A DNA stretch of 64,000 bases from Vitrella brassicaformis CCMP3155 (GCA_001179505.1 CDMY01000613.1:186001-250000); one strand, 5' to 3'; shown: positions 41,312-48,751, numbered from the stretch's first letter. The notes: generated from the letters alone by a model not told the origin. Numbers and translations: made by a program.

Positions 41312-41611
41312 NNNNNNNNNNNNNNNNNNNNNNNNNNNNNNNNNNNNNNNNNNNNNNNNNNNNNNNNNNNNNNNNNNNNNNNNNNNNNNNNNNNNNNNNN
41401 NNNNNNNNNNNNNNNNNNNNNNNNNNNNNNNNNNNNNNNNNNNNNNNNNNNNNNNNNNNNNNNNNNNNNNNNNNNNNNNNNNNNNNNNNNNNNNNNNNNN
41501 NNNNNNNNNNNNNNNNNNNNNNNNNNNNNNNNNNNNNNNNNNNNNNNNNNNNNNNNNNNNNNNNNNNNNNNNNNNNNNNNNNNNNNNNNNNNNNNNNNNN
41601 NNNNNNNNNNN
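41312..41611. other. Assembly gap (300 N)
   Basis: Run of N. Confidence 1.
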
Positions 41612-41689: not shown

Positions 41690-43836
41690 TCAGGCCCACC
41701 GCGCCACTGTCTGGTTAACGGCCAGCATCTCGTCCCTCAGTGCGATGTAGCTCTGCTTGGGGCGGTAGGCTGCGTCGAAGAGGAGGGGGTAGTCGGGCCG
41801 GAACATGTCGCGGTTCAGCCACGTCGACTTGTCTACGATGCCCCACGTCAGGAAAGCCGTGCAGTTGGGCTCCTCCAGACACACACGCATGAACCGCCGG
41901 TACACGTCGGCCTGACAAACACAACACATACACAGGAGAGCGATCGGGACTCAAGCGGTTTCGCCCGCCCACCTGTTTCTTCTCAATCTCCGGGCCCCAC
42001 TCATTGTCGTCGCCGCACTTGATCCAGTTGCCCGTTCCCTCTGGGGCTCCGACATGCTCCCAGCGGCCGCACGAGACATCCAGCTCGGTGAACTGCACCT
42101 CCAGGCCCAGCGCCCCCAGCCGCCTCATGTTTGCCCTTATCCCGTCAAAGAGGTCGTAGTCGTGTGTCACGTGCGACTGGAAGCCCACCTGCATACGCAG
42201 AGCACACGAGCAACTCATCAATCAAACATGGCACCAGCAGATGATGGTCAGCGTGGTGTCGTCAGTCACCCCGTCGACGGGAATGGCGCGCCTCTTCATG
42301 CCTTTCATCAGGTTGTAGAGGGCGTCCGACTTGCCGGCGCTGTAGCCGTCGGCAGACTCGCACCAGTACTCATTATAGATGAGCTTCATGGGCGGCATGG
42401 GGGTGTCGTGCAGGGCGTCGGCGGCTTTGGCGGCCTTGGAAGCCGTCACGAAGGCGAGATCAATGAACTCGGGGATGTCTGGGTACCACACGGTGTCGCG
42501 CAGCCTGTAGCCGCCCTTCCGCAGTTGGTCGGCGTCCTGAAAGTCGTCAAGGGCTGCACACACACACACACACACACAGAGAAAAGAGAGAGAGAGTGAC
42601 AAAGGGGTACACAGGAGGGCGGCGGGCGAGTGAGCCTGTGTGTCTGGTCTGCTGCTCACACACACCCTCATTGACAACGTCCCAATGGATGAGATTGGGG
42701 TACTCGGGCGTCCTGAACCGCTCCACCATCCTCTCAATATGCCCCACAAGCTGGTTCCTCTTATCGGCAGCACTTAGCGTGGGCAGCCACACCCCCACAT
42801 TCCCATAATTGACGTCCATGTACCACAGCAGCGTGTGAAACCGCGCCTTCTGCCCGTTGGCCTTGGCAAGCCTGAAGATCTGCTCGCAGGCGTCAAAGGC
42901 AATGTTGTCGAGGTCGGCGTCCGTCCGGGTCGTCCACCACTTGCACTCTCGCTCGGCCGAGATGACTCCCAGCTCCTCCTTGACGATCTGCTGATAGGCT
43001 GCCTCGCCGCCATATCGGCACCTGGGGTTGTTCTGGGCGTCGAGGGGCGCCTGGCAAATGACCGACCCGAAAGCGATGCCCGCCTTGGCCGCTGCGGCCT
43101 TGAGCGACCCCACCCACTGAGAGGAGCTCTCCCCATTGGCTGCCTGAATGCCAGTCAGAGCCAAAGTAGTGTTCGTCAGTGGCGAGCTGCCTGAGAGCCA
43201 GCAAACAGCACATCAGATGGGATGGGATGGCGGGGCGTTTTGGCATCCTCTCACCGCCTGTGTCCACAGTGAGGTTGACGGTGTAGATTGTCGGTGAGGC
43301 GTCCCCGTCCCTCAGCACCGCAGCCTCCAATGTGTGATCCCCATCCAGCAGGAAACTGTGGTCCGACGCCTCCTGCAGCACCCTCAGCGCCCTGCTGGCC
43401 TTGGCGGCGCCCTCAAACACACTGCCGTCGCGGGGAAACAGCGAGTACGGCGGGAGGCTGGCCTGGTGGTGGAAGACATTCTCCCCGGAGGTGTCCGTGA
43501 CTGTGAAGTCGACGGAGACGATGGGCGGCAAACCTCTGATGTGCTCGGGGTCTGGCTGGAAGAGAATGGTGATTGGGTCGGGCAGGTTGGCCGGGAGGGG
43601 GAAGGGGCTGCTGGTGAGGGGGAGGGCGTTGAGCAGGCGGCCGTTTGTGGCGTCGACGAAGCTGAGGAGGAAGACCTGTTCCTCGGGCGCAAACACACTT
43701 TCCTGAGCATCTGCACACAGACAGACAGACAGACAGACAACGTTGCAGACAGGGGCCGCTGCAACGTTGCTGTCTTGTGACCTGCAAATAGTTGTGCCAC
43801 CGCCAGGGACGCGCAGATAGGCCAAAACAGCTGCAT
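41690..43836 (-). CDS. Secreted glycoside hydrolase family 10 (endo-1,4-beta-xylanase-like) with an N-terminal Ig-like module, 6 exons
   Basis: Signal peptide MQLFWPICASLAVAQLFA. GH10 motifs ERECKW, ARFHTLLW, WDVVNE (acid/base Glu, ~42667-42684), KLIYNEY, PVDG|VGFQSH, VQFTELDV (nucleophile Glu, ~42075-42095), TWGIVDKSTWL and PLLFDAAYRPKQSY. Confidence 0.93.
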
Positions 43837-43996
43837 TGAATCGTAAAGGTACTTGAATGCCAGGTAGAAATAAAGGTACTTGAATTGTAAATCAGCCGTT
43901 GGAAGCAGACGCAGAATGATCCAGCGGATATCTCGCAGTTACTTGTTGCCCTGAGAGTGCGCAAAACCACCCCCTGACTCCTGAGGAAGCGCGGAG
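43837..43996. promoter_or_regulatory. 160-bp divergent promoter region between GH10 and the PQQ dehydrogenase, with a 15-bp direct repeat
   Basis: The ATGs at 43836 (-) and 43997 (+) face away from each other. TAAAGGTACTTGAAT occurs at 43844-43858 and 43871-43885. Confidence 0.65.
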
Positions 43997-46900
43997 ATGG
44001 AGGCGCTCCTTGCTCTCGTGTGTGCCGTCGTCTTGATGACGGTGATACCTGGGTGGGCAGCACCCCCACAGAGCAAGAAGCCAAGGGCAGGCCCGTCATT
44101 GAAGAAGCCTGAGGAGTCTAAGCCTCTGCGACCACCATTGAAGCGGCACCGGATGAGGCCGAGGCAAAAGGCTGTGACAACCTTCGAGCCCGAGAGGCCG
44201 GGGAAAGGGGAGCTGTTCGACGAGTGCGATGAGGTGCGCCACGCAGAGCTGCCCGCCGGATTCCGGGCGTGCGTCGTTGCAACGGGGCTGCAGTAGGACA
44301 GCAAAGAGAGAGAGAGAGAGAGAGATGGGTGGGTATGATGCGCCTGGCTGTCTATATGCTGCTGCTGCTGTTGCTGTTGTGTGTGTGTGTGTGCAGGCAG
44401 CCCCGTCAGCTGGTGGTGTCGAATGAGACTGATGACGCCATTGTGCTGGTCGACAGGGTGGGGTGCAGCTTCTTGCTGCCAGGTGGGCTGGGTCGGGGTG
44501 TGGGGAGTAGTAGCGTCTGGGCATATTTCTCTGTCTTTCCTCTCTCTCTGTCTCTGTGTGTGTGTGCAGACCAATGTGACGCCATGTGCGGCCAAAGTAA
44601 GCAAGCCTCGGAGGAAGGAATGGTCCGCTTGGACCTTCTCACTCACGACCCTTTGGTTGCTTCTTTTCCTCCTTGTGCAGGTGGCAATGACAGTATCATC
44701 ACAATGAAGGACCTCAATCGCAACGGGGTGTGTGAGTGAATGAGTGAGTGCACCTCGACGGTCAGACTGTGTACTGTACCTCTCGTCCCTCTCTCTGTCC
44801 AGCTGATCGACAAGAACGAGAGGTACGTCTTGTGGGAGGGCGACGAGTTGCGGCTCAGCCACGGTGAGCCAGGCAACACAAACACACACTCACACGCATG
44901 GCTGGTCGCTCGACGCACACGCGCCATCCATAAGCTGTGCTGCTGTGTTGTGTGTAGGGCTTGCTGTCCACCGCGGCTACCTCTTCGCCAGCAATGCGAC
45001 ACACGTCATGAGGTGGGTGAGGTGACCTGGGCGCCTCCGCCATTGTTCAGAAGGGGATTTTTGCCATCCCGTGTGTTGTGTGCGTGTGTGGTTGTGGTTG
45101 TGTGTGCAGGTGGCCTTACACGCCAGGCCAGACGTCTCCTCTGAACGAGAGCCAGCGTGTGGTGGTCATGACCGGCATGAACATCGGGGGCTGCGGGGCT
45201 GCCGCCCTCGGACACCTCGTAAGTCGGTGTGATGTGCAAACAGTGCACACTGCTTGCTGCGGATTATGATCATCATTGCAAGCTGTGGTGTGTGTTGTGT
45301 GTTGTGTCTTCTTGTGGTGTGTGGTGTGTGGCAGACGAGGACTCTGATCGTTGACGACCAGGACCGGCTGTATGTCACCATCGGGAGCTTCAGAGACTCG
45401 TGGCCAGGTAGGCTATCTATCGCCTTTCTATGGACAATATGCCTACGTGTTGTGTTGGTGCTGTGTTTGTCAAGGTGATGAGGACTCATCCAGGGCGAGA
45501 ATACAAAGGTTGGTTGGCAAGAATGAGTGAATGGACCGATGACACACCAGGGAGGGAGGCGGGAATATTTCTGTTGTTTGCTCTTTCAGGTTCGAGAACG
45601 TGACAGACCCGCTGGTCCTCCACACGTACAAGACACAGAACTGGACAGACGGGGAGGTCTTCGCGGTGAGTGAGCCCATGCCTCTCATCCATCCATCCAT
45701 CCATCCATCCACAGCCCTCCACTCCCTGCCACCCACCCACCACGTCTGCCTGTCTCTGTCTATGTCTGGGTGGGGTGGGGCAGGACGGCACGCGCAACAC
45801 AGTGGGGCTGGCCTTTGATCCAAAAGGTGACACACACATGAATGACAGAGACACGATGGATGGATGCCATGATGGCATCAACAGTCGCATGTGACTGACT
45901 GACTGACTGACCGATCGCAGGCCGACTGTGGGGCGTCGACACGAATGACGACTTCATCACACACGAGGAGCTTGGCGGAGACGACGTCCGGGAAGGTACA
46001 CACACACCCTCGCTGTCTCCACTGATCTCCTCTCCCCTGCAGACAACCCCTCGGAGGAGCTGAATCTCTTCACTGAGGAGCGAGCCGGCAGGTCCTTCGG
46101 CTACCCCCGCTGCTGGACAGAGGGACGACTCGGCCCCAAACACGCACGCGGCCGCGGCTCACAGTGGTCCGTCCCGGGCCGCAACGACACCTACATCAAG
46201 GGCCAGGGCCGCAGCAACGACACCACACGCTTTCTCAATGACACCTGGTGCCAGAACATCTCCAACAACCAGCCGCCCGAGCTGCCGCTGCAGGCGCACG
46301 CCAGCCACATCGGCATTGCCTTCCTGGGCGGCAAGGGGAGCAGCGACAGGTGGCGGGAGAGGTGTGAGGAGACGGGGGAGAGTGCCAACGGCGGCTTTCC
46401 CTGTGAGTATGGGGGCGATGCCTTCCTGGCTGCCCATGGGACCTACCAGGCCGAGGATTGCCCGCCGTGCGACAGCCGGTCGCAGCTGGCGGGCTACCAA
46501 GTCAGTCGCGTGTTGATGGACGAGGATGGGATGCCCACTGGGGAGGTGCTCAAGCTACTGGCTGAAGAAAGTAAGCCTTGCATGAGGGCCAGATACAAGC
46601 AACCACCCTGTGTGTGTGTGTAGCCGGGAGCAACGATTGGGATGTTCGGCCAGTCTCGACTGCCTTTGACAGCGAGGTCAGTCAGTCGTCGAAAGATGAT
46701 ACCACACCACACCAACCATACGTCTCAATTAGGTCTTCTCTTGTCTCTATGTGTCAGGGCCGGATGTTCGTGTCGGATGACGGGACCGGCCAGATACTCA
46801 TGGTGAGTCAGGAAAGGAGAGCAAAGGAGAGACACCCACCTGTTTGCCTTTGCCGCGTACATACACCAACCAGGTGTACTACAGAGCGGCCCTCGCAGAG

Positions 46901-47743
46901 ACCGCCATCACCGAGTCCCCATCCCCCCTGCCGCTTGTGGCCGGATTCACACCCGCCCAGCCACCCAAGTGTGACCCCGCCAGAGCCGCAGAAGCCCCAT
47001 CAGGCCGGTCACCCCTCGCCATGCACAAACACATCAGCCAGTGCGCCTCAAGCTGCCTTGAGAGGGGGTCGTCGCAAAGAAGCACTGCTGGCTTTGACGG
47101 CGACGGCGGGGGCATCGCGGACTTGTCGATGGCGTCAGCTGCGATCGACAAGAGCTGTGAGGGCTTCTCTGTGGACGTCAATGGCACGTGTGCGGTGCAT
47201 CCCGACGAGGCAATGCACAAAGCGCAGGGGAGCCCGCCGTGCACAAAACTGACGTACAGGAGGGCGGCGCCGCCCGAGGGCTACTTCGAGAAGGGCGTAG
47301 GCAGCTGCAGGGCCTTCTCGGCCTACCCCGCGCCCCTCAAAAGAGGCAAAAAATTCTCCATGTCCTACTCACGGCTGGTGCCCGCCGGTCCGAACGCCAA
47401 GACCATCGACTTCGCCAACTGTGTCAATGCGTGTGACGACTACGGGGGCAAGAGCAAGTGGTGTGTCGGGCTGGACTACGACTACGCCAACAGGTCCTCC
47501 TACCCCTGCCACCTGTACGTGGCGGCAACCAAGGGGAAACTGGTGTACGCGCCTGTGGACCACCGGCTGACGCAGCGGGCGTACCAACGGCCGGATCGGT
47601 GGTGCCTCGGCCGCGACGTGCCGCGGGAGATACTTGAGGAGGCCGAAGCGGCCATGAAAAAGGTGAAGCTCACCACAACAGAAAAGCCGAAGCTTAAGAA
47701 GGCAGAAAGGAAAGGCCACAAGCAGACAAGAAGTAGTGTGTGA
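43997..47743 (+). CDS. Secreted PQQ-dependent sugar dehydrogenase (AA12 / glucose-sorbosone dehydrogenase-like propeller) fused to C-terminal PAN/apple-like domains, about 15 exons
   Basis: Signal peptide MEALLALVCAVVLMTVIPGWA. Motifs LPAGFRACVVATGLQ|QPRQL, LSH|GLAVH, GHL|TRTL, GTRNTVGLAFDP, DNPSEELN, FGYPRCW, LQAHASHIGIAF, AFLAAHGTY, AGYQVSRV, RPVSTAFDSE|GRMFVSDDGTGQI. The last exon has Cys-patterned modules (CVNACDDYGGKSKWCVGLDYDY...PCHLY). Confidence 0.85.
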
Positions 47744-48751
47744 GCGCAGTTCAGTTCAGCTCAGTTCAGTTCAGTCAGGTGCGGTGGATGCATCCCATCA
47801 TGGCCACGCCATCCATCGGTGCGTGTCGATGGCATGGCGATGGAGAGAGACACGTGTATGCGCTGTTGGATTGCTGGACGGCTCGGCTCATTGGACTATG
47901 CTATGTGGTGTGGTGTATGTGATGTGCGTCCCTAGGGTACAGCGAGCGGCGGCCGGGTGGTCGGTGGCGGCTTGCTGTGGGTGGTGGTCTTAGCAATTCA
48001 CACACTATTCCACCGCCACCCTCCATGACAGACATGACTGACGTACGTGTGGTGTGCAGCGGGAGACCGAGGCAGTGCGTGTGTGTGTGTGTGTGTGTGT
48101 TCGTCCTGTCTGCCTGTCTGCCTGCCTGCCTCGCTCGCAGAGCCTTTTGCTATGTCGATGAGTGTGTGGCCGTCACTGTGGATAGGGTATGGTAGGGTTT
48201 GTGGCACTGATGAAAGTCTTTGGTGTCCCTATCTGTTTTGTCTGCATGCCATGTGTGCTGTGAGTGTGTCGTGTCGCCCGTCGTGTCACTCATTGACGTC
48301 ATGATACGATGGATGGACCGGCGGTGATTTAAACTTATCGCATTCGTGGAAGCATTGTCACGAACACGCCCGGAAACAATCAAGGGCGGACCCGACAGTG
48401 GCAATTCTCCGCTGCAGCTGTCATGGCCATCATGATTATGTAGCTGCACAAGGAACGCACCAACGATGTCACAAGACACGCACCAGTCCTAATTGATGTC
48501 CATCCATCCGTCCATCCCCTGGCTGGCTGACGGACTGACACATGCATTGCAGACCAAAGGCCGACATCACCTCCCTACGCACTGCCTGCCTATCCCACTG
48601 TTTGACTGGATGATATGTACACACATCGATACTCTCACTCGTTGCCCGCCCGCCTCACCTCACATCGGTCGCATCGCATCAACACACCCGGCCCACACGC
48701 ACGATCCATGCATGGGTGTCACACATCTATACGACACACGGAGGGGTCATG

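What the first reader, a model, noticed from the sequence alone, without database searches (positions are those of the whole stretch)
41690..47743. Head-to-head secreted GH10 xylanase and PQQ-dependent sugar dehydrogenase: a candidate two-gene polysaccharide hydrolysis/oxidation module in a photosynthetic alveolate
Seen: two genes with signal peptides start 160 bp apart on opposite strands. One has both GH10 catalytic glutamates (WDVVNE, TELDV). The other has the PQQ propeller motifs (GH-x-TRT, GxRN, DNPxEE, FGYP, AHG). Known: GH10 enzymes release xylo-oligosaccharides, and GSDH/AA12 PQQ enzymes oxidise aldoses. Characterised eukaryotic PQQ enzymes are fungal AA12, and eukaryotes are generally thought not to make PQQ. 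Inference: the pair may be co-regulated to cut and oxidise xylan (algal wall, host mucus, or own wall remodelling at sporangium release) using bacterially supplied PQQ, which would imply a metabolic link to the microbiome. Caveat: divergent pairing is the norm in this window, so adjacency alone is weak evidence.
Basis: partly seen in the sequence, partly recalled or inferred. Interest (0 to 1): 0.85.

Follow-up and report, generated by a model that had tools for sequence, protein, structure and literature searches.

The report
Neighbouring xylanase-type and PQQ enzyme genes
In the coral-associated alga Vitrella brassicaformis, a secreted xylanase-family gene and a secreted PQQ-type sugar-oxidising gene start 160 bases apart on opposite strands, but apart from being neighbours nothing I could test suggests they work as a unit.

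Summary
On Vitrella brassicaformis contig C613, a 6-exon GH10 gene (minus strand, 585 aa) and a 16-exon gene (plus strand, 825-829 aa) have start codons 160 bp apart. Both begin with signal-peptide-like N-termini. Spliced RNA-like contigs from one public run cover both.

- **GH10 gene:** both catalytic glutamates are present. A previously unassigned Ig-like N-terminal domain is shared with three other Vitrella GH10 paralogues.
- **Second gene:** it belongs to the fungal-type AA12 family, not bacterial GSDH. A family profile matches both solved AA12 enzymes end to end (E 1e-98 and 4e-85). Every PQQ and Ca2+ ligand of the C. cinerea enzyme (CcPDH) is conserved. UniProt already auto-names it.

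The "cut and oxidise xylan" module is not supported.
- Vitrella has about 20 GH10 loci and about 7 AA12-like loci, and only this pair shares a contig.
- The sister paralogue with the same architecture lies next to TRAM and ankyrin genes.
- Three non-Vitrella homologue contigs carry no GH10.
- The characterised AA12 enzymes oxidise L-fucose, D-arabinose, L-galactose and D-glucosone. D-xylose gave no activity in the three enzymes tested on it.

Dependence on outside PQQ is plausible and matches fungal AA12 biology. Other windows of this scan had already noted AA12 and GH10 genes in this genome. Verdict: ordinary new members of known families, and probably a coincidental pair.

The parts
41690..43836 (-). 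GH10 gene. Six exons: 43836-43782, 43710-43255, 43190-42666, 42553-42270, 42188-41973 and 41911-41690. Product 585 aa.
   Evidence: All introns are GT-AG and the frame is open. PF00331 matches exons 3-6. In RNA-like contigs of X1, the 41911-41971 intron is shown by a joint. Contig breaks at 42549/42666 and a loose end at 42189 fit two further introns.
43782..43836 (-). GH10 exon 1: signal-peptide-like N-terminus, MQLFWPICASLAVAQLFA.
   Evidence: Read from the sequence and a hydropathy scan. No signal-peptide predictor was run.
43255..43710 (-). GH10 exon 2: an N-terminal domain of about 150 aa, predicted to be an Ig-like beta-sandwich. No Pfam family.
   Evidence: No Pfam hit. The domain sits directly upstream of the GH10 exons at three other Vitrella loci: C231, C850 and C435. 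The AF2 model has pLDDT 67.7 and is all-beta. Foldseek finds only generic Ig-like folds at TM about 0.4: RhoGDI, CbhA Fn3-like and BT4673.
42667..42669 (-). GH10 catalytic acid/base, Glu345 of HWDVVNE.
   Evidence: Aligns to WDVVNE of Streptomyces Xys1, 1NQ6. Coordinates.
42084..42086 (-). GH10 nucleophile, Glu475 of QFTELDVS.
   Evidence: Aligns to TELDVS of the endoxylanase 2F8Q. Coordinates.
43837..43996 (.). 160-bp divergent intergenic region between the two start codons. GC 0.49. Contains two copies of AAAGGTACTTGAAT, at 43845-43858 and 43872-43885.
   Evidence: The 14-mer occurs only at these two places in the 72.7-Mb genome.
43997..47743 (+). AA12-type PQQ dehydrogenase gene. Sixteen exons: 43997-44292, 44397-44482, 44570-44596, 44681-44727, 44803-44863, 44958-45012, 45110-45218, 45335-45407, 45475-45508, 45590-45665, 45784-45826, 45921-45995, 46043-46570, 46624-46676, 46758-46802 and 46874-47743. 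Product 825 aa. The public annotation (P0151, 829 aa) instead splices to a last exon at about 47936-48028.
   Evidence: model; seven introns are confirmed by GT..AG joints, and one RNA-like contig links exon 13 to exon 16; the first 799 aa equal P0151. PF22807 at 45 bits.
43997..44059 (+). AA12 signal-peptide-like N-terminus, MEALLALVCAVVLMTVIPGWA. A Lys/Arg/Pro-rich stretch of about 60 aa follows.
   Evidence: Read from the sequence and a hydropathy scan.
44245..46802 (+). Six-bladed AA12 beta-propeller, residues about 84-556 of P0151, spread over exons 1-15.
   Evidence: Family profile A1 matches TrAA12 6I1T (E 1.1e-98, chain 8-404 of 405) and CcPDH 6JT5 (E 3.6e-85, chain 4-409 of 410). The best bacterial-type hit, 3DAS, reaches only E 3e-11.
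45213..45215 (+). His226 of GHLTRT. Equivalent to the catalytic base His363 of CcPDH and His153 of TrAA12.
   Evidence: Alignments. Residue roles from PMC6881789 and PMC6881810. Coordinates.
45793..45798 (+). Arg292-Asn293 of GTRN. Equivalent to Arg430-Asn431 of CcPDH, which contact the PQQ quinone oxygens.
   Evidence: (invariant columns). Residue roles from PMC6881789.
45950..45952 (+). Asp313 of VDTNDD. Equivalent to the Ca2+ ligand Asp451 of CcPDH and Asp242 of TrAA12.
   Evidence: Residue role from PMC6881789.
44404..44406 (+). Arg102 of QQPRQ. Equivalent to Arg273 of CcPDH and Arg57 of TrAA12, which bind the PQQ C-2 carboxylate. The remaining PQQ ligands are His413 (46297-46299), His459 (46435-46437) and Arg512 (46647-46649).
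   Evidence: Residue roles from PMC6881789.
46874..47680 (+). C-terminal Cys-rich region of about 270 aa in exon 16, with 11 cysteines conserved with paralogue P0001. It may form two PAN/apple-like modules, but this is unverified.
   Evidence: conserved Cys pattern, 43% identity to P0001; language-model features point to PAN clusters at 0.85-0.88, below the 0.9 guide. Against: no Pfam hit at E<=1, an AF2 model with pLDDT 38, and a null hhalign against the Pfam-positive PAN of P0019.

Best explanation
These are two independent secreted carbohydrate-active enzyme genes of Vitrella brassicaformis that happen to share a short divergent intergenic region.

Gene A is an intact GH10 retaining endo-glycanase, most likely a beta-xylanase. 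It carries a lineage-specific Ig-like N-terminal domain. It is one of about 20 GH10 loci in an expanded family that probably serves wall remodelling or degradation of external glycans.

Gene B is a six-bladed AA12 beta-propeller. It would bind PQQ and Ca2+ taken from the surroundings, since no pqq genes were found. By analogy with CcPDH and TrAA12, it would oxidise C-1 of a free aldose by hydride transfer to PQQ, with His226 as the general base. Its Cys-rich C-terminal region probably tethers it to a glycan or protein surface.

Shown here: gene structures, apparent transcription, family membership and conserved catalytic residues. Inferred: secretion, PQQ use, substrates and the tethering role. 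The adjacency itself most likely has no functional meaning beyond possible shared promoter activity.
For: - Gene models are consistent, and spliced RNA-like contigs cover both genes.
- GH10: Pfam matches on four exons and both catalytic Glu residues aligned to solved xylanases.
- AA12: PF22807 is above its cut-off. The family profile matches both solved AA12 structures end to end. All nine PQQ/Ca residues are conserved, eight of them as invariant columns and Arg512 as a nearly invariant one, in a 23-sequence family alignment.
- About 20 GH10 loci lie on 17 contigs and about 7 AA12-like loci on 7 contigs. C613 is the only contig with both.
- The sister paralogue P0001 has the same architecture and groups with P0151 at 100/100 support. 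It has no GH10 within 10-16 kb; its flanks show a TRAM_2 gene and an ankyrin gene.
- The contigs of P0152, P0153 and P0155 carry no GH10.
- The intergenic 14-mer repeat is unique in the genome, so it is not a shared regulon element.
- Known AA12 substrates are L-fucose, D-arabinose, L-galactose and D-glucosone. D-xylose was inactive in the three enzymes tested on it (PMC4332668, PMC6881810, 10.1101/2025.09.02.673750).
Against: - A GH10-AA12 neighbour pair is nominally unlikely by chance. The expected number is about 7 x 2 x 20 / 22,800 = 0.012. The gene count is from memory of the genome paper.
- A 160-bp head-to-head spacing makes some shared transcriptional control likely.
- Both genes have contigs in the same RNA-like run.
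- This AA12 subclade sits on a long branch. Its substrate need not match the fungal enzymes.
- No expression series could be examined.
Confidence: 0.68

Rival explanations
1. A shared bidirectional promoter co-expresses the GH10 and the AA12. The GH10 releases xylo-oligosaccharides or xylose, and the AA12 oxidises their reducing ends using bacterial PQQ.
For: The start codons are 160 bp apart head to head. Both products look secreted. Both genes have contigs in the same RNA-like run. Chance adjacency of these two specific families is nominally about 1%.
Against: Linkage is absent at all other AA12-like and GH10 loci, at the sister paralogue, and on three homologue contigs. The characterised AA12s prefer 1C4 sugars, and D-xylose was inactive where it was tested (PMC4332668; 10.1101/2025.09.02.673750). 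The pair was picked post hoc from a genome rich in secreted glycan enzymes. The scan also flagged a head-to-head GH10-sulfatase pair elsewhere.
Confidence: 0.07
2. Loose co-regulation without substrate hand-over. The two genes share promoter activity as part of a general extracellular glycan or wall-remodelling programme. They act on different sugars of the same matrix: xylan backbone versus fucose-, arabinose- or galactose-type sugars of wall or coral mucus.
For: The divergent spacer is short, and a locally duplicated 14-mer lies 9-49 bp upstream of the GH10 ATG. Both genes are expressed in X1. Both carry extra non-catalytic domains that could bind surfaces.
Against: There are no expression data across conditions. 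The 14-mer is not found at other GH10 or AA12 loci.
Confidence: 0.2
3. Gene B is a non-catalytic propeller, acting as a lectin- or HHIP-like binding protein, and does not use PQQ.
For: More than 25% of fungal AA12 sequences lack the catalytic His (PMC6881810). TrAA12 has very low activity. The protein carries a large adhesive-looking Cys-rich tail.
Against: The catalytic His226, Arg292/Asn293, the Ca ligand Asp313 and every PQQ-carboxylate ligand are conserved.
Confidence: 0.05

Closest known systems
CAZy AA12 PQQ-dependent pyranose dehydrogenases: Coprinopsis cinerea CcPDH (PDB 6JT5/6JWF) and Trichoderma reesei TrAA12 (PDB 6H7T/6I1Q/6I1T)
   Same: Both are six-bladed propellers, and the family profile matches the solved structures end to end (E 4e-85 and 1e-98). 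The Arg, His, Arg-Asn, Asp, Glu, His, His and Arg residues that bind PQQ and Ca2+ in CcPDH are all kept (PMC6881789). Both are secreted enzymes in an organism with no detected pqq genes.
   Different: The host is a photosynthetic alveolate, not a fungus. There is no AA8 cytochrome or CBM1. Instead there is a basic N-terminal stretch of about 60 aa and a C-terminal Cys-rich region of about 270 aa. The propeller carries an inserted loop in exon 13 (about residues 360-395). Pairwise sequence similarity is modest (phmmer E about 1e-13). Activity and substrate are untested.
Bacterial soluble glucose/aldose dehydrogenases (Pfam GSDH PF07995; sGDH 1CQ1, E. coli YliI/Asd 2G8S)
   Same: Same fold class and the same proposed general-base/hydride-transfer chemistry. 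The His and Arg-Asn motifs are shared (PMC6881789).
   Different: P0151 scores below the PF07995 cut-off (22 bits against 25). The best bacterial-type PDB hit reaches only E 3e-11, against 1e-98 for AA12. The Ca site and the PQQ C-7 carboxylate loop are of the AA12 type.
GH10 endo-beta-1,4-xylanases, for example Streptomyces halstedii Xys1 (1NQ6) and S. olivaceoviridis/S. lividans xylanases
   Same: The (beta/alpha)8 family profile is covered from 1 to 310. WDVVNE and TELDV align exactly. The GxQxH and WG..D..SW motifs are present.
   Different: The gene is intron-split and eukaryotic, with a novel Ig-like N-terminal domain. There is an insert of about 30 aa after the nucleophile strand. Glycone-subsite positions differ: ENE becomes ERE and WHSQ becomes WYMD. 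The roles of those positions come from my own knowledge of GH10 structures. Specificity for 1,4-xylan, 1,3-xylan or another glycan is therefore unproven.
Other Vitrella AA12 paralogues: P0001 (C219), and P0019 (AA12 + PAN + trefoil; UniProt 'Apple domain-containing protein')
   Same: P0001 has the same three-part architecture and is the sister sequence (69% identity on exon 13). P0019 shows that AA12 fused to adhesive modules recurs in this genome.
   Different: None of these paralogues lies near a GH10. The C-terminal region of P0151 shows no detectable profile similarity to the PAN of P0019.

Membership tests
GH10 (Pfam PF00331) | Sequence match to the family profile above the curated cut-off, across the whole (beta/alpha)8 domain | tested here: met
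   Exons 3-6 score 70.9, 31.9, 30.1 and 48.8 bits against a 22.1 cut-off. They cover profile positions 1-137, 132-201, 201-242 and 252-310.
GH10 (Pfam PF00331) | Catalytic acid/base Glu (end of strand 4, ..NE) and nucleophile Glu (strand 7, TELD) | tested here: met
   E345 in WDVVNE and E475 in TELDV align to the same residues of 1NQ6 and 2F8Q.
GH10 (Pfam PF00331) | Endo-beta-1,4-xylanase activity | not testable with these tools
   Two glycone-subsite positions differ from the consensus. An enzyme assay is needed.
CAZy AA12 (Pfam PF22807 TrAA12-like) | Profile match above the curated cut-off, closer to AA12 than to bacterial GSDH | tested here: met
   P0151 scores 45.0 bits against 30.9 for PF22807, and 22 bits against 25 for PF07995. 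The family profile gives E 1e-98 and 4e-85 to the solved AA12 enzymes, against 3e-11 to 3DAS.
CAZy AA12 (Pfam PF22807 TrAA12-like) | PQQ-binding residues of CcPDH: Arg273, His363, Arg430, Asn431, His539, His560 and Arg621 | tested here: met
   The equivalents are R102, H226, R292, N293, H413, H459 and R512. Most are invariant in the 23-sequence alignment. Residue roles from PMC6881789.
CAZy AA12 (Pfam PF22807 TrAA12-like) | Active-site Ca2+ site: Asp451 (or Glu) side chain and Glu471 via water | tested here: met
   D313 in VDTNDD and E332 in DNPSEE align to D451 and E471.
CAZy AA12 (Pfam PF22807 TrAA12-like) | PQQ- and Ca2+-dependent oxidation of a sugar | not testable with these tools
   This needs recombinant protein with PQQ and Ca2+ and a DCPIP or cytochrome c assay.
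PAN/apple domain (C-terminal region of gene B) | Significant match to a PAN profile or PAN fold | tested here: inconclusive
   No Pfam hit at E<=1. hhalign against the PAN of P0019 is null. The AF2 model has pLDDT 38. Only sub-threshold language-model and low-TM leads point to PAN clusters.
Co-functioning gene pair or cluster (eukaryotic 'polysaccharide utilisation' module) | Linkage conserved in paralogues or relatives | tested here: not met
   C613 is the only contig with both families. The sister paralogue and three foreign homologue contigs lack a GH10 neighbour.
Co-functioning gene pair or cluster (eukaryotic 'polysaccharide utilisation' module) | Product of one enzyme is a substrate of the other | tested here: not met
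   This rests on literature only. The characterised AA12s do not use D-xylose (PMC4332668; PMC6881810; 10.1101/2025.09.02.673750). The Vitrella enzyme itself is untested.
Co-functioning gene pair or cluster (eukaryotic 'polysaccharide utilisation' module) | Co-expression across conditions | not testable with these tools
   Only one RNA-like run, held as contigs, could be laid. Contig depth cannot rank expression.

The most novel reading that the evidence does not exclude
The pair is a true bidirectionally regulated unit. A chromerid alga cuts a xylan-type glycan (its own wall at sporangium release, or host or algal material) and oxidises the released reducing sugars with an AA12 enzyme loaded with PQQ made by associated bacteria. 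That would be a cofactor-level dependence of an apicomplexan relative on its microbiome, and an AA12 specificity (xylose or xylo-oligomers) not seen in fungi.
Probability: 0.06. Interest if true: 0.7.

Novelty: new member of a known kind. Interest (0 to 1): 0.3.

Why it matters
If the coupling were real, it would be a rare two-gene glycan-processing unit in a eukaryote. It would also show a PQQ "vitamin" link between an alga related to malaria parasites and its bacteria.

What the evidence supports is more modest but still useful.
- Vitrella carries a small family of about seven AA12 PQQ-type dehydrogenases with intact cofactor sites.
- It also carries an expanded GH10 family of about twenty loci with lineage-specific add-on domains.
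- The AA12 genes extend the range of likely PQQ-using eukaryotes beyond fungi. They are reasonable targets for testing whether chromerids depend on bacterial PQQ.
- The pairing itself should not be used as evidence of function.

Tried and rejected
- Pfam on single AA12 exons gave nothing. The family only became visible through a library-wide HMMER search with exon 13 and then through the full-length database proteins.
- A PDB search with exon 13 alone hit only a designed Kelch propeller, which is spurious blade similarity.
- pqqC and pqqE HMM searches of the genome were blank. The pqqC model rang in no control genome, and six-frame search is weak across introns, so these are weak negatives.
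- LPMO AA9, LPMO AA10 and AA8 cytochrome models were also blank. This gives no support for the fungal "AA12 feeds LPMO" route, but the negatives are again weak.
- The look-up of encoding contigs does not serve this genome, for P0001 or P0151.
- Pfam on ten large ORFs flanking the pair in the window found no families, so no wider CAZyme cluster was seen.
- The C-terminal domain fold prediction failed (pLDDT 38), so I ran no fold search on it. hhalign against a true PAN domain was null.
- The fold search for the GH10 N-terminal domain returned only generic Ig-like folds. No CBM family could be named.
- I considered a plastid-targeting reading of the basic stretch after the AA12 signal peptide. 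I could not test it, and I judge it unlikely for a PQQ/Ca2+ enzyme.
- Literature searches found no paper linking AA12 or GH10 to chromerids.
- In scripts, exons were concatenated only to check the frame and map residue coordinates.
Full report
**Organism and locus.** The window is contig C613:186001-250000 of a 72.7-Mb, 1064-contig assembly. Database proteins identical to the window's products are labelled Vitrella brassicaformis CCMP3155.

**Gene A (GH10, minus strand).**
- From the sequence I derived six GT-AG exons: 43836-43782, 43710-43255, 43190-42666, 42553-42270, 42188-41973 and 41911-41690. They give 585 aa with no internal stop.
- Each of exons 3-6 independently matches Pfam PF00331 above its cut-off. 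Together they tile profile positions 1-310 of 311.
- The acid/base Glu (E345, WDVVNE) and the nucleophile Glu (E475, TELDV) align to the same residues in solved endo-1,4-beta-xylanases.
- Two glycone-subsite positions differ from the usual consensus: ENE becomes ERE and WHSQ becomes WYMD. The roles of these positions come from my own knowledge, so "xylanase" is the likeliest activity but not a proven one.
- Exon 1 encodes a signal-peptide-like leader.
- Exon 2 encodes a domain of about 150 aa with no Pfam match. The same domain sits directly upstream of GH10 exons at three other Vitrella loci: C231, C850 and C435.
- A four-sequence AlphaFold model of this domain (pLDDT 67.7) is an all-beta sandwich. 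It resembles only generic Ig-like folds at TM about 0.4.

**Gene B (plus strand).**
- Sixteen GT-AG exons from 43997 to 47743 give 825 aa.
- Single exons gave no Pfam hit.
- Exon 13, searched against 1.84 billion representative proteins, found 195 relatives. The best was an 817-aa Vitrella paralogue, P0001.
- A search with P0001 returned P0151 (829 aa). P0151 is identical to my model over its first 799 residues. I used it as the referenced full-length protein from then on.
- P0151 passes PF22807 (TrAA12-like, 45 bits against 30.9) and fails bacterial GSDH PF07995 (22 bits against 25).
- A 23-sequence family profile matches the two solved AA12 enzymes end to end: TrAA12 at E 1.1e-98 and CcPDH at E 3.6e-85. 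The best bacterial-type structure reaches only E 3e-11.
- I took the holo-CcPDH residue list from PMC6881789 and mapped it with the printed alignments. Every ligand is kept:

| Role (CcPDH residue) | P0151 residue |
|---|---|
| PQQ ligand (R273) | R102 |
| Catalytic base (H363) | H226 |
| PQQ quinone contacts (R430/N431) | R292/N293 |
| Ca2+ ligand (D451) | D313 |
| Ca2+ via water (E471) | E332 |
| PQQ ligand (H539) | H413 |
| PQQ ligand (H560) | H459 |
| PQQ ligand (R621) | R512 |

- Eight of these nine are invariant columns in the family alignment, and R512 is nearly invariant.
- UniProt already auto-names this protein a PQQ-dependent pyranose dehydrogenase beta-propeller domain protein.

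**Extra regions of gene B.**
- After the signal-peptide-like leader comes a Lys/Arg/Pro-rich stretch of about 60 aa.
- After the propeller comes a region of about 270 aa with 11 cysteines conserved with P0001.
- Language-model features and low-TM atlas matches point to PAN/apple clusters, but below the tool's own guide values.
- Pfam is blank, hhalign against a Pfam-positive PAN of paralogue P0019 is null, and the fold model failed with pLDDT 38.
- I therefore call it Cys-rich and possibly PAN-like, unverified.
- The public annotation adds a last exon (about 47936-48028) encoding a hydrophobic tail. The X1 contig instead runs unspliced through to 47743, past the stop at 47741. I favour the 825-aa soluble form but cannot exclude the other.

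**Transcription.** Run X1 holds 35% of the sampled words and is only guessed to be RNA. Its contigs carry GT..AG joints at seven AA12 introns. They carry a CT..AC joint at the last GH10 intron, and contig breaks that fit two more. DNA-like runs X2 and X3 cover the introns. Both genes therefore appear transcribed and spliced in that sample. Contig depth cannot be used to compare expression, and the single reads call is spent, so co-expression is untested.

**Is the pairing meaningful?**
- The start codons are 160 bp apart (43837-43996).
- The spacer holds two copies of a 14-mer, AAAGGTACTTGAAT, that occurs nowhere else in the genome. It is a local duplication and not a shared regulatory word.
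- Genome-wide, GH10 exon matches fall at about 20 loci on 17 contigs. AA12-like matches fall on C613, C219, C275, C1028, C840, C414 and C214. C613 is the only contig in both lists.
- The sister paralogue P0001 groups with P0151 at 100/100 support. It lies at C219:137121-140941. The 30 kb fetched around it has no GH10 similarity and no synteny with the window. Its flanks show a TRAM_2 gene and an ankyrin gene.
- The contigs of three of the closest non-Vitrella homologues in the length-limited search (one eukaryote-like, two bacterial-looking) have no GH10.
- Ten large flanking ORFs in the window have no Pfam family, so no wider enzyme cluster is apparent.
- The nominal chance of one GH10-AA12 neighbour pair is about 0.012, using a gene count of about 22,800 from memory. 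But the pair was chosen post hoc in a genome rich in secreted glycan enzymes. The scan's notes list another head-to-head "GH10 + sulfatase" story.

**Biochemical plausibility.**
- CcPDH prefers D-glucosone, L-fucose, D-arabinose and L-galactose, which are sugars in the 1C4 chair. Only L-xylose was tested, and it was poor, with a Km of 236 mM (PMC4332668).
- TrAA12 is weakly active on L-fucose and D-arabinose (PMC6881810).
- Nothing known about AA12 therefore predicts oxidation of GH10 products.
- The fungal link from AA12 to LPMOs also finds no support. AA9, AA10 and AA8 models are blank in this genome, though these are weak negatives.

**PQQ supply.** pqqC and pqqE models find nothing in the genome. 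These negatives are weak, because the pqqC model rang in no control genome and six-frame search is weak across introns. The result agrees with the view that fungal AA12 enzymes take PQQ from the environment (PMC6881810).

**Distribution.** Relatives include a Marchantia paleacea protein, fungal proteins, MMETSP protist transcripts and many environmental sequences. [quoted passage not shown] A non-fungal eukaryotic PQQ oxidoreductase was reported in T. cruzi in 2026 (PMC13384848). I found no paper on AA12 or GH10 in chromerids.

**Verdict.** Both genes are sound new members of known families with some lineage-specific add-on domains. The functional-module reading rests on adjacency alone and fails the linkage and substrate checks that could be made.

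Noticed in passing
window 43845-43858 and 43872-43885: Two exact copies of AAAGGTACTTGAAT lie 27 bp apart, 9-49 bp upstream of the GH10 start codon. They are the only two occurrences in the whole 72.7-Mb genome. This may be a local promoter or 5'-UTR duplication.
   Followed up: partly
window 43255-43710 (-); L005:1501-1956, L006:1501-1812, L007:1501-1788: An unassigned Ig-like N-terminal domain of about 150 aa heads four different Vitrella GH10 genes. It has 12 invariant residues, including an SLF motif. It could be a new carbohydrate-binding or spacer module.
   Followed up: partly
window 41312-41611: A 300-N assembly gap begins 78 bp after the GH10 stop codon. RNA-like contig 1 of X1 extends about 155 nt leftward from 41744. 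The 3' UTR therefore appears to run into the gap.
   Followed up: no
window 47680-48028: The public annotation of P0151 splices out about 47680-47935 and adds a 30-aa hydrophobic C-terminal exon. The X1 contig instead reads straight through to the stop at 47741. This could be a mis-annotation or an alternative membrane-anchored isoform.
   Followed up: partly
whole genome G000: GH10 is expanded to about 20 loci on 17 contigs, with several in tandem (C571, C573, C656). AA12-like propellers occur at about 7 loci. One of these, P0019, is fused to Pfam-significant PAN and trefoil domains.
   Followed up: partly
window 45307-45330 and 45890-45911 (introns of gene B): Short dispersed repeats, including a TGAC/CTGA tetranucleotide run at about 45885-45910, break many DNA-run contigs and give numerous loose ends. 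A similar TGACTGACTGAC run follows the GH10 stop codon at 41690.
   Followed up: no
window 42667-43188 (-), GH10 exon 3: Positions that are usually ENE...KW and WHSQ in GH10 read ERE...KW and WYMD here. This hints at a modified -1/-2 subsite and possibly a non-canonical substrate.
   Followed up: no
P0002 (Marchantia paleacea KAG6554811.1): The best named non-Vitrella relative of exon 13 is a liverwort protein (49% identity, E 4.5e-24). AA12-like propellers therefore also occur in land plants.
   Followed up: no
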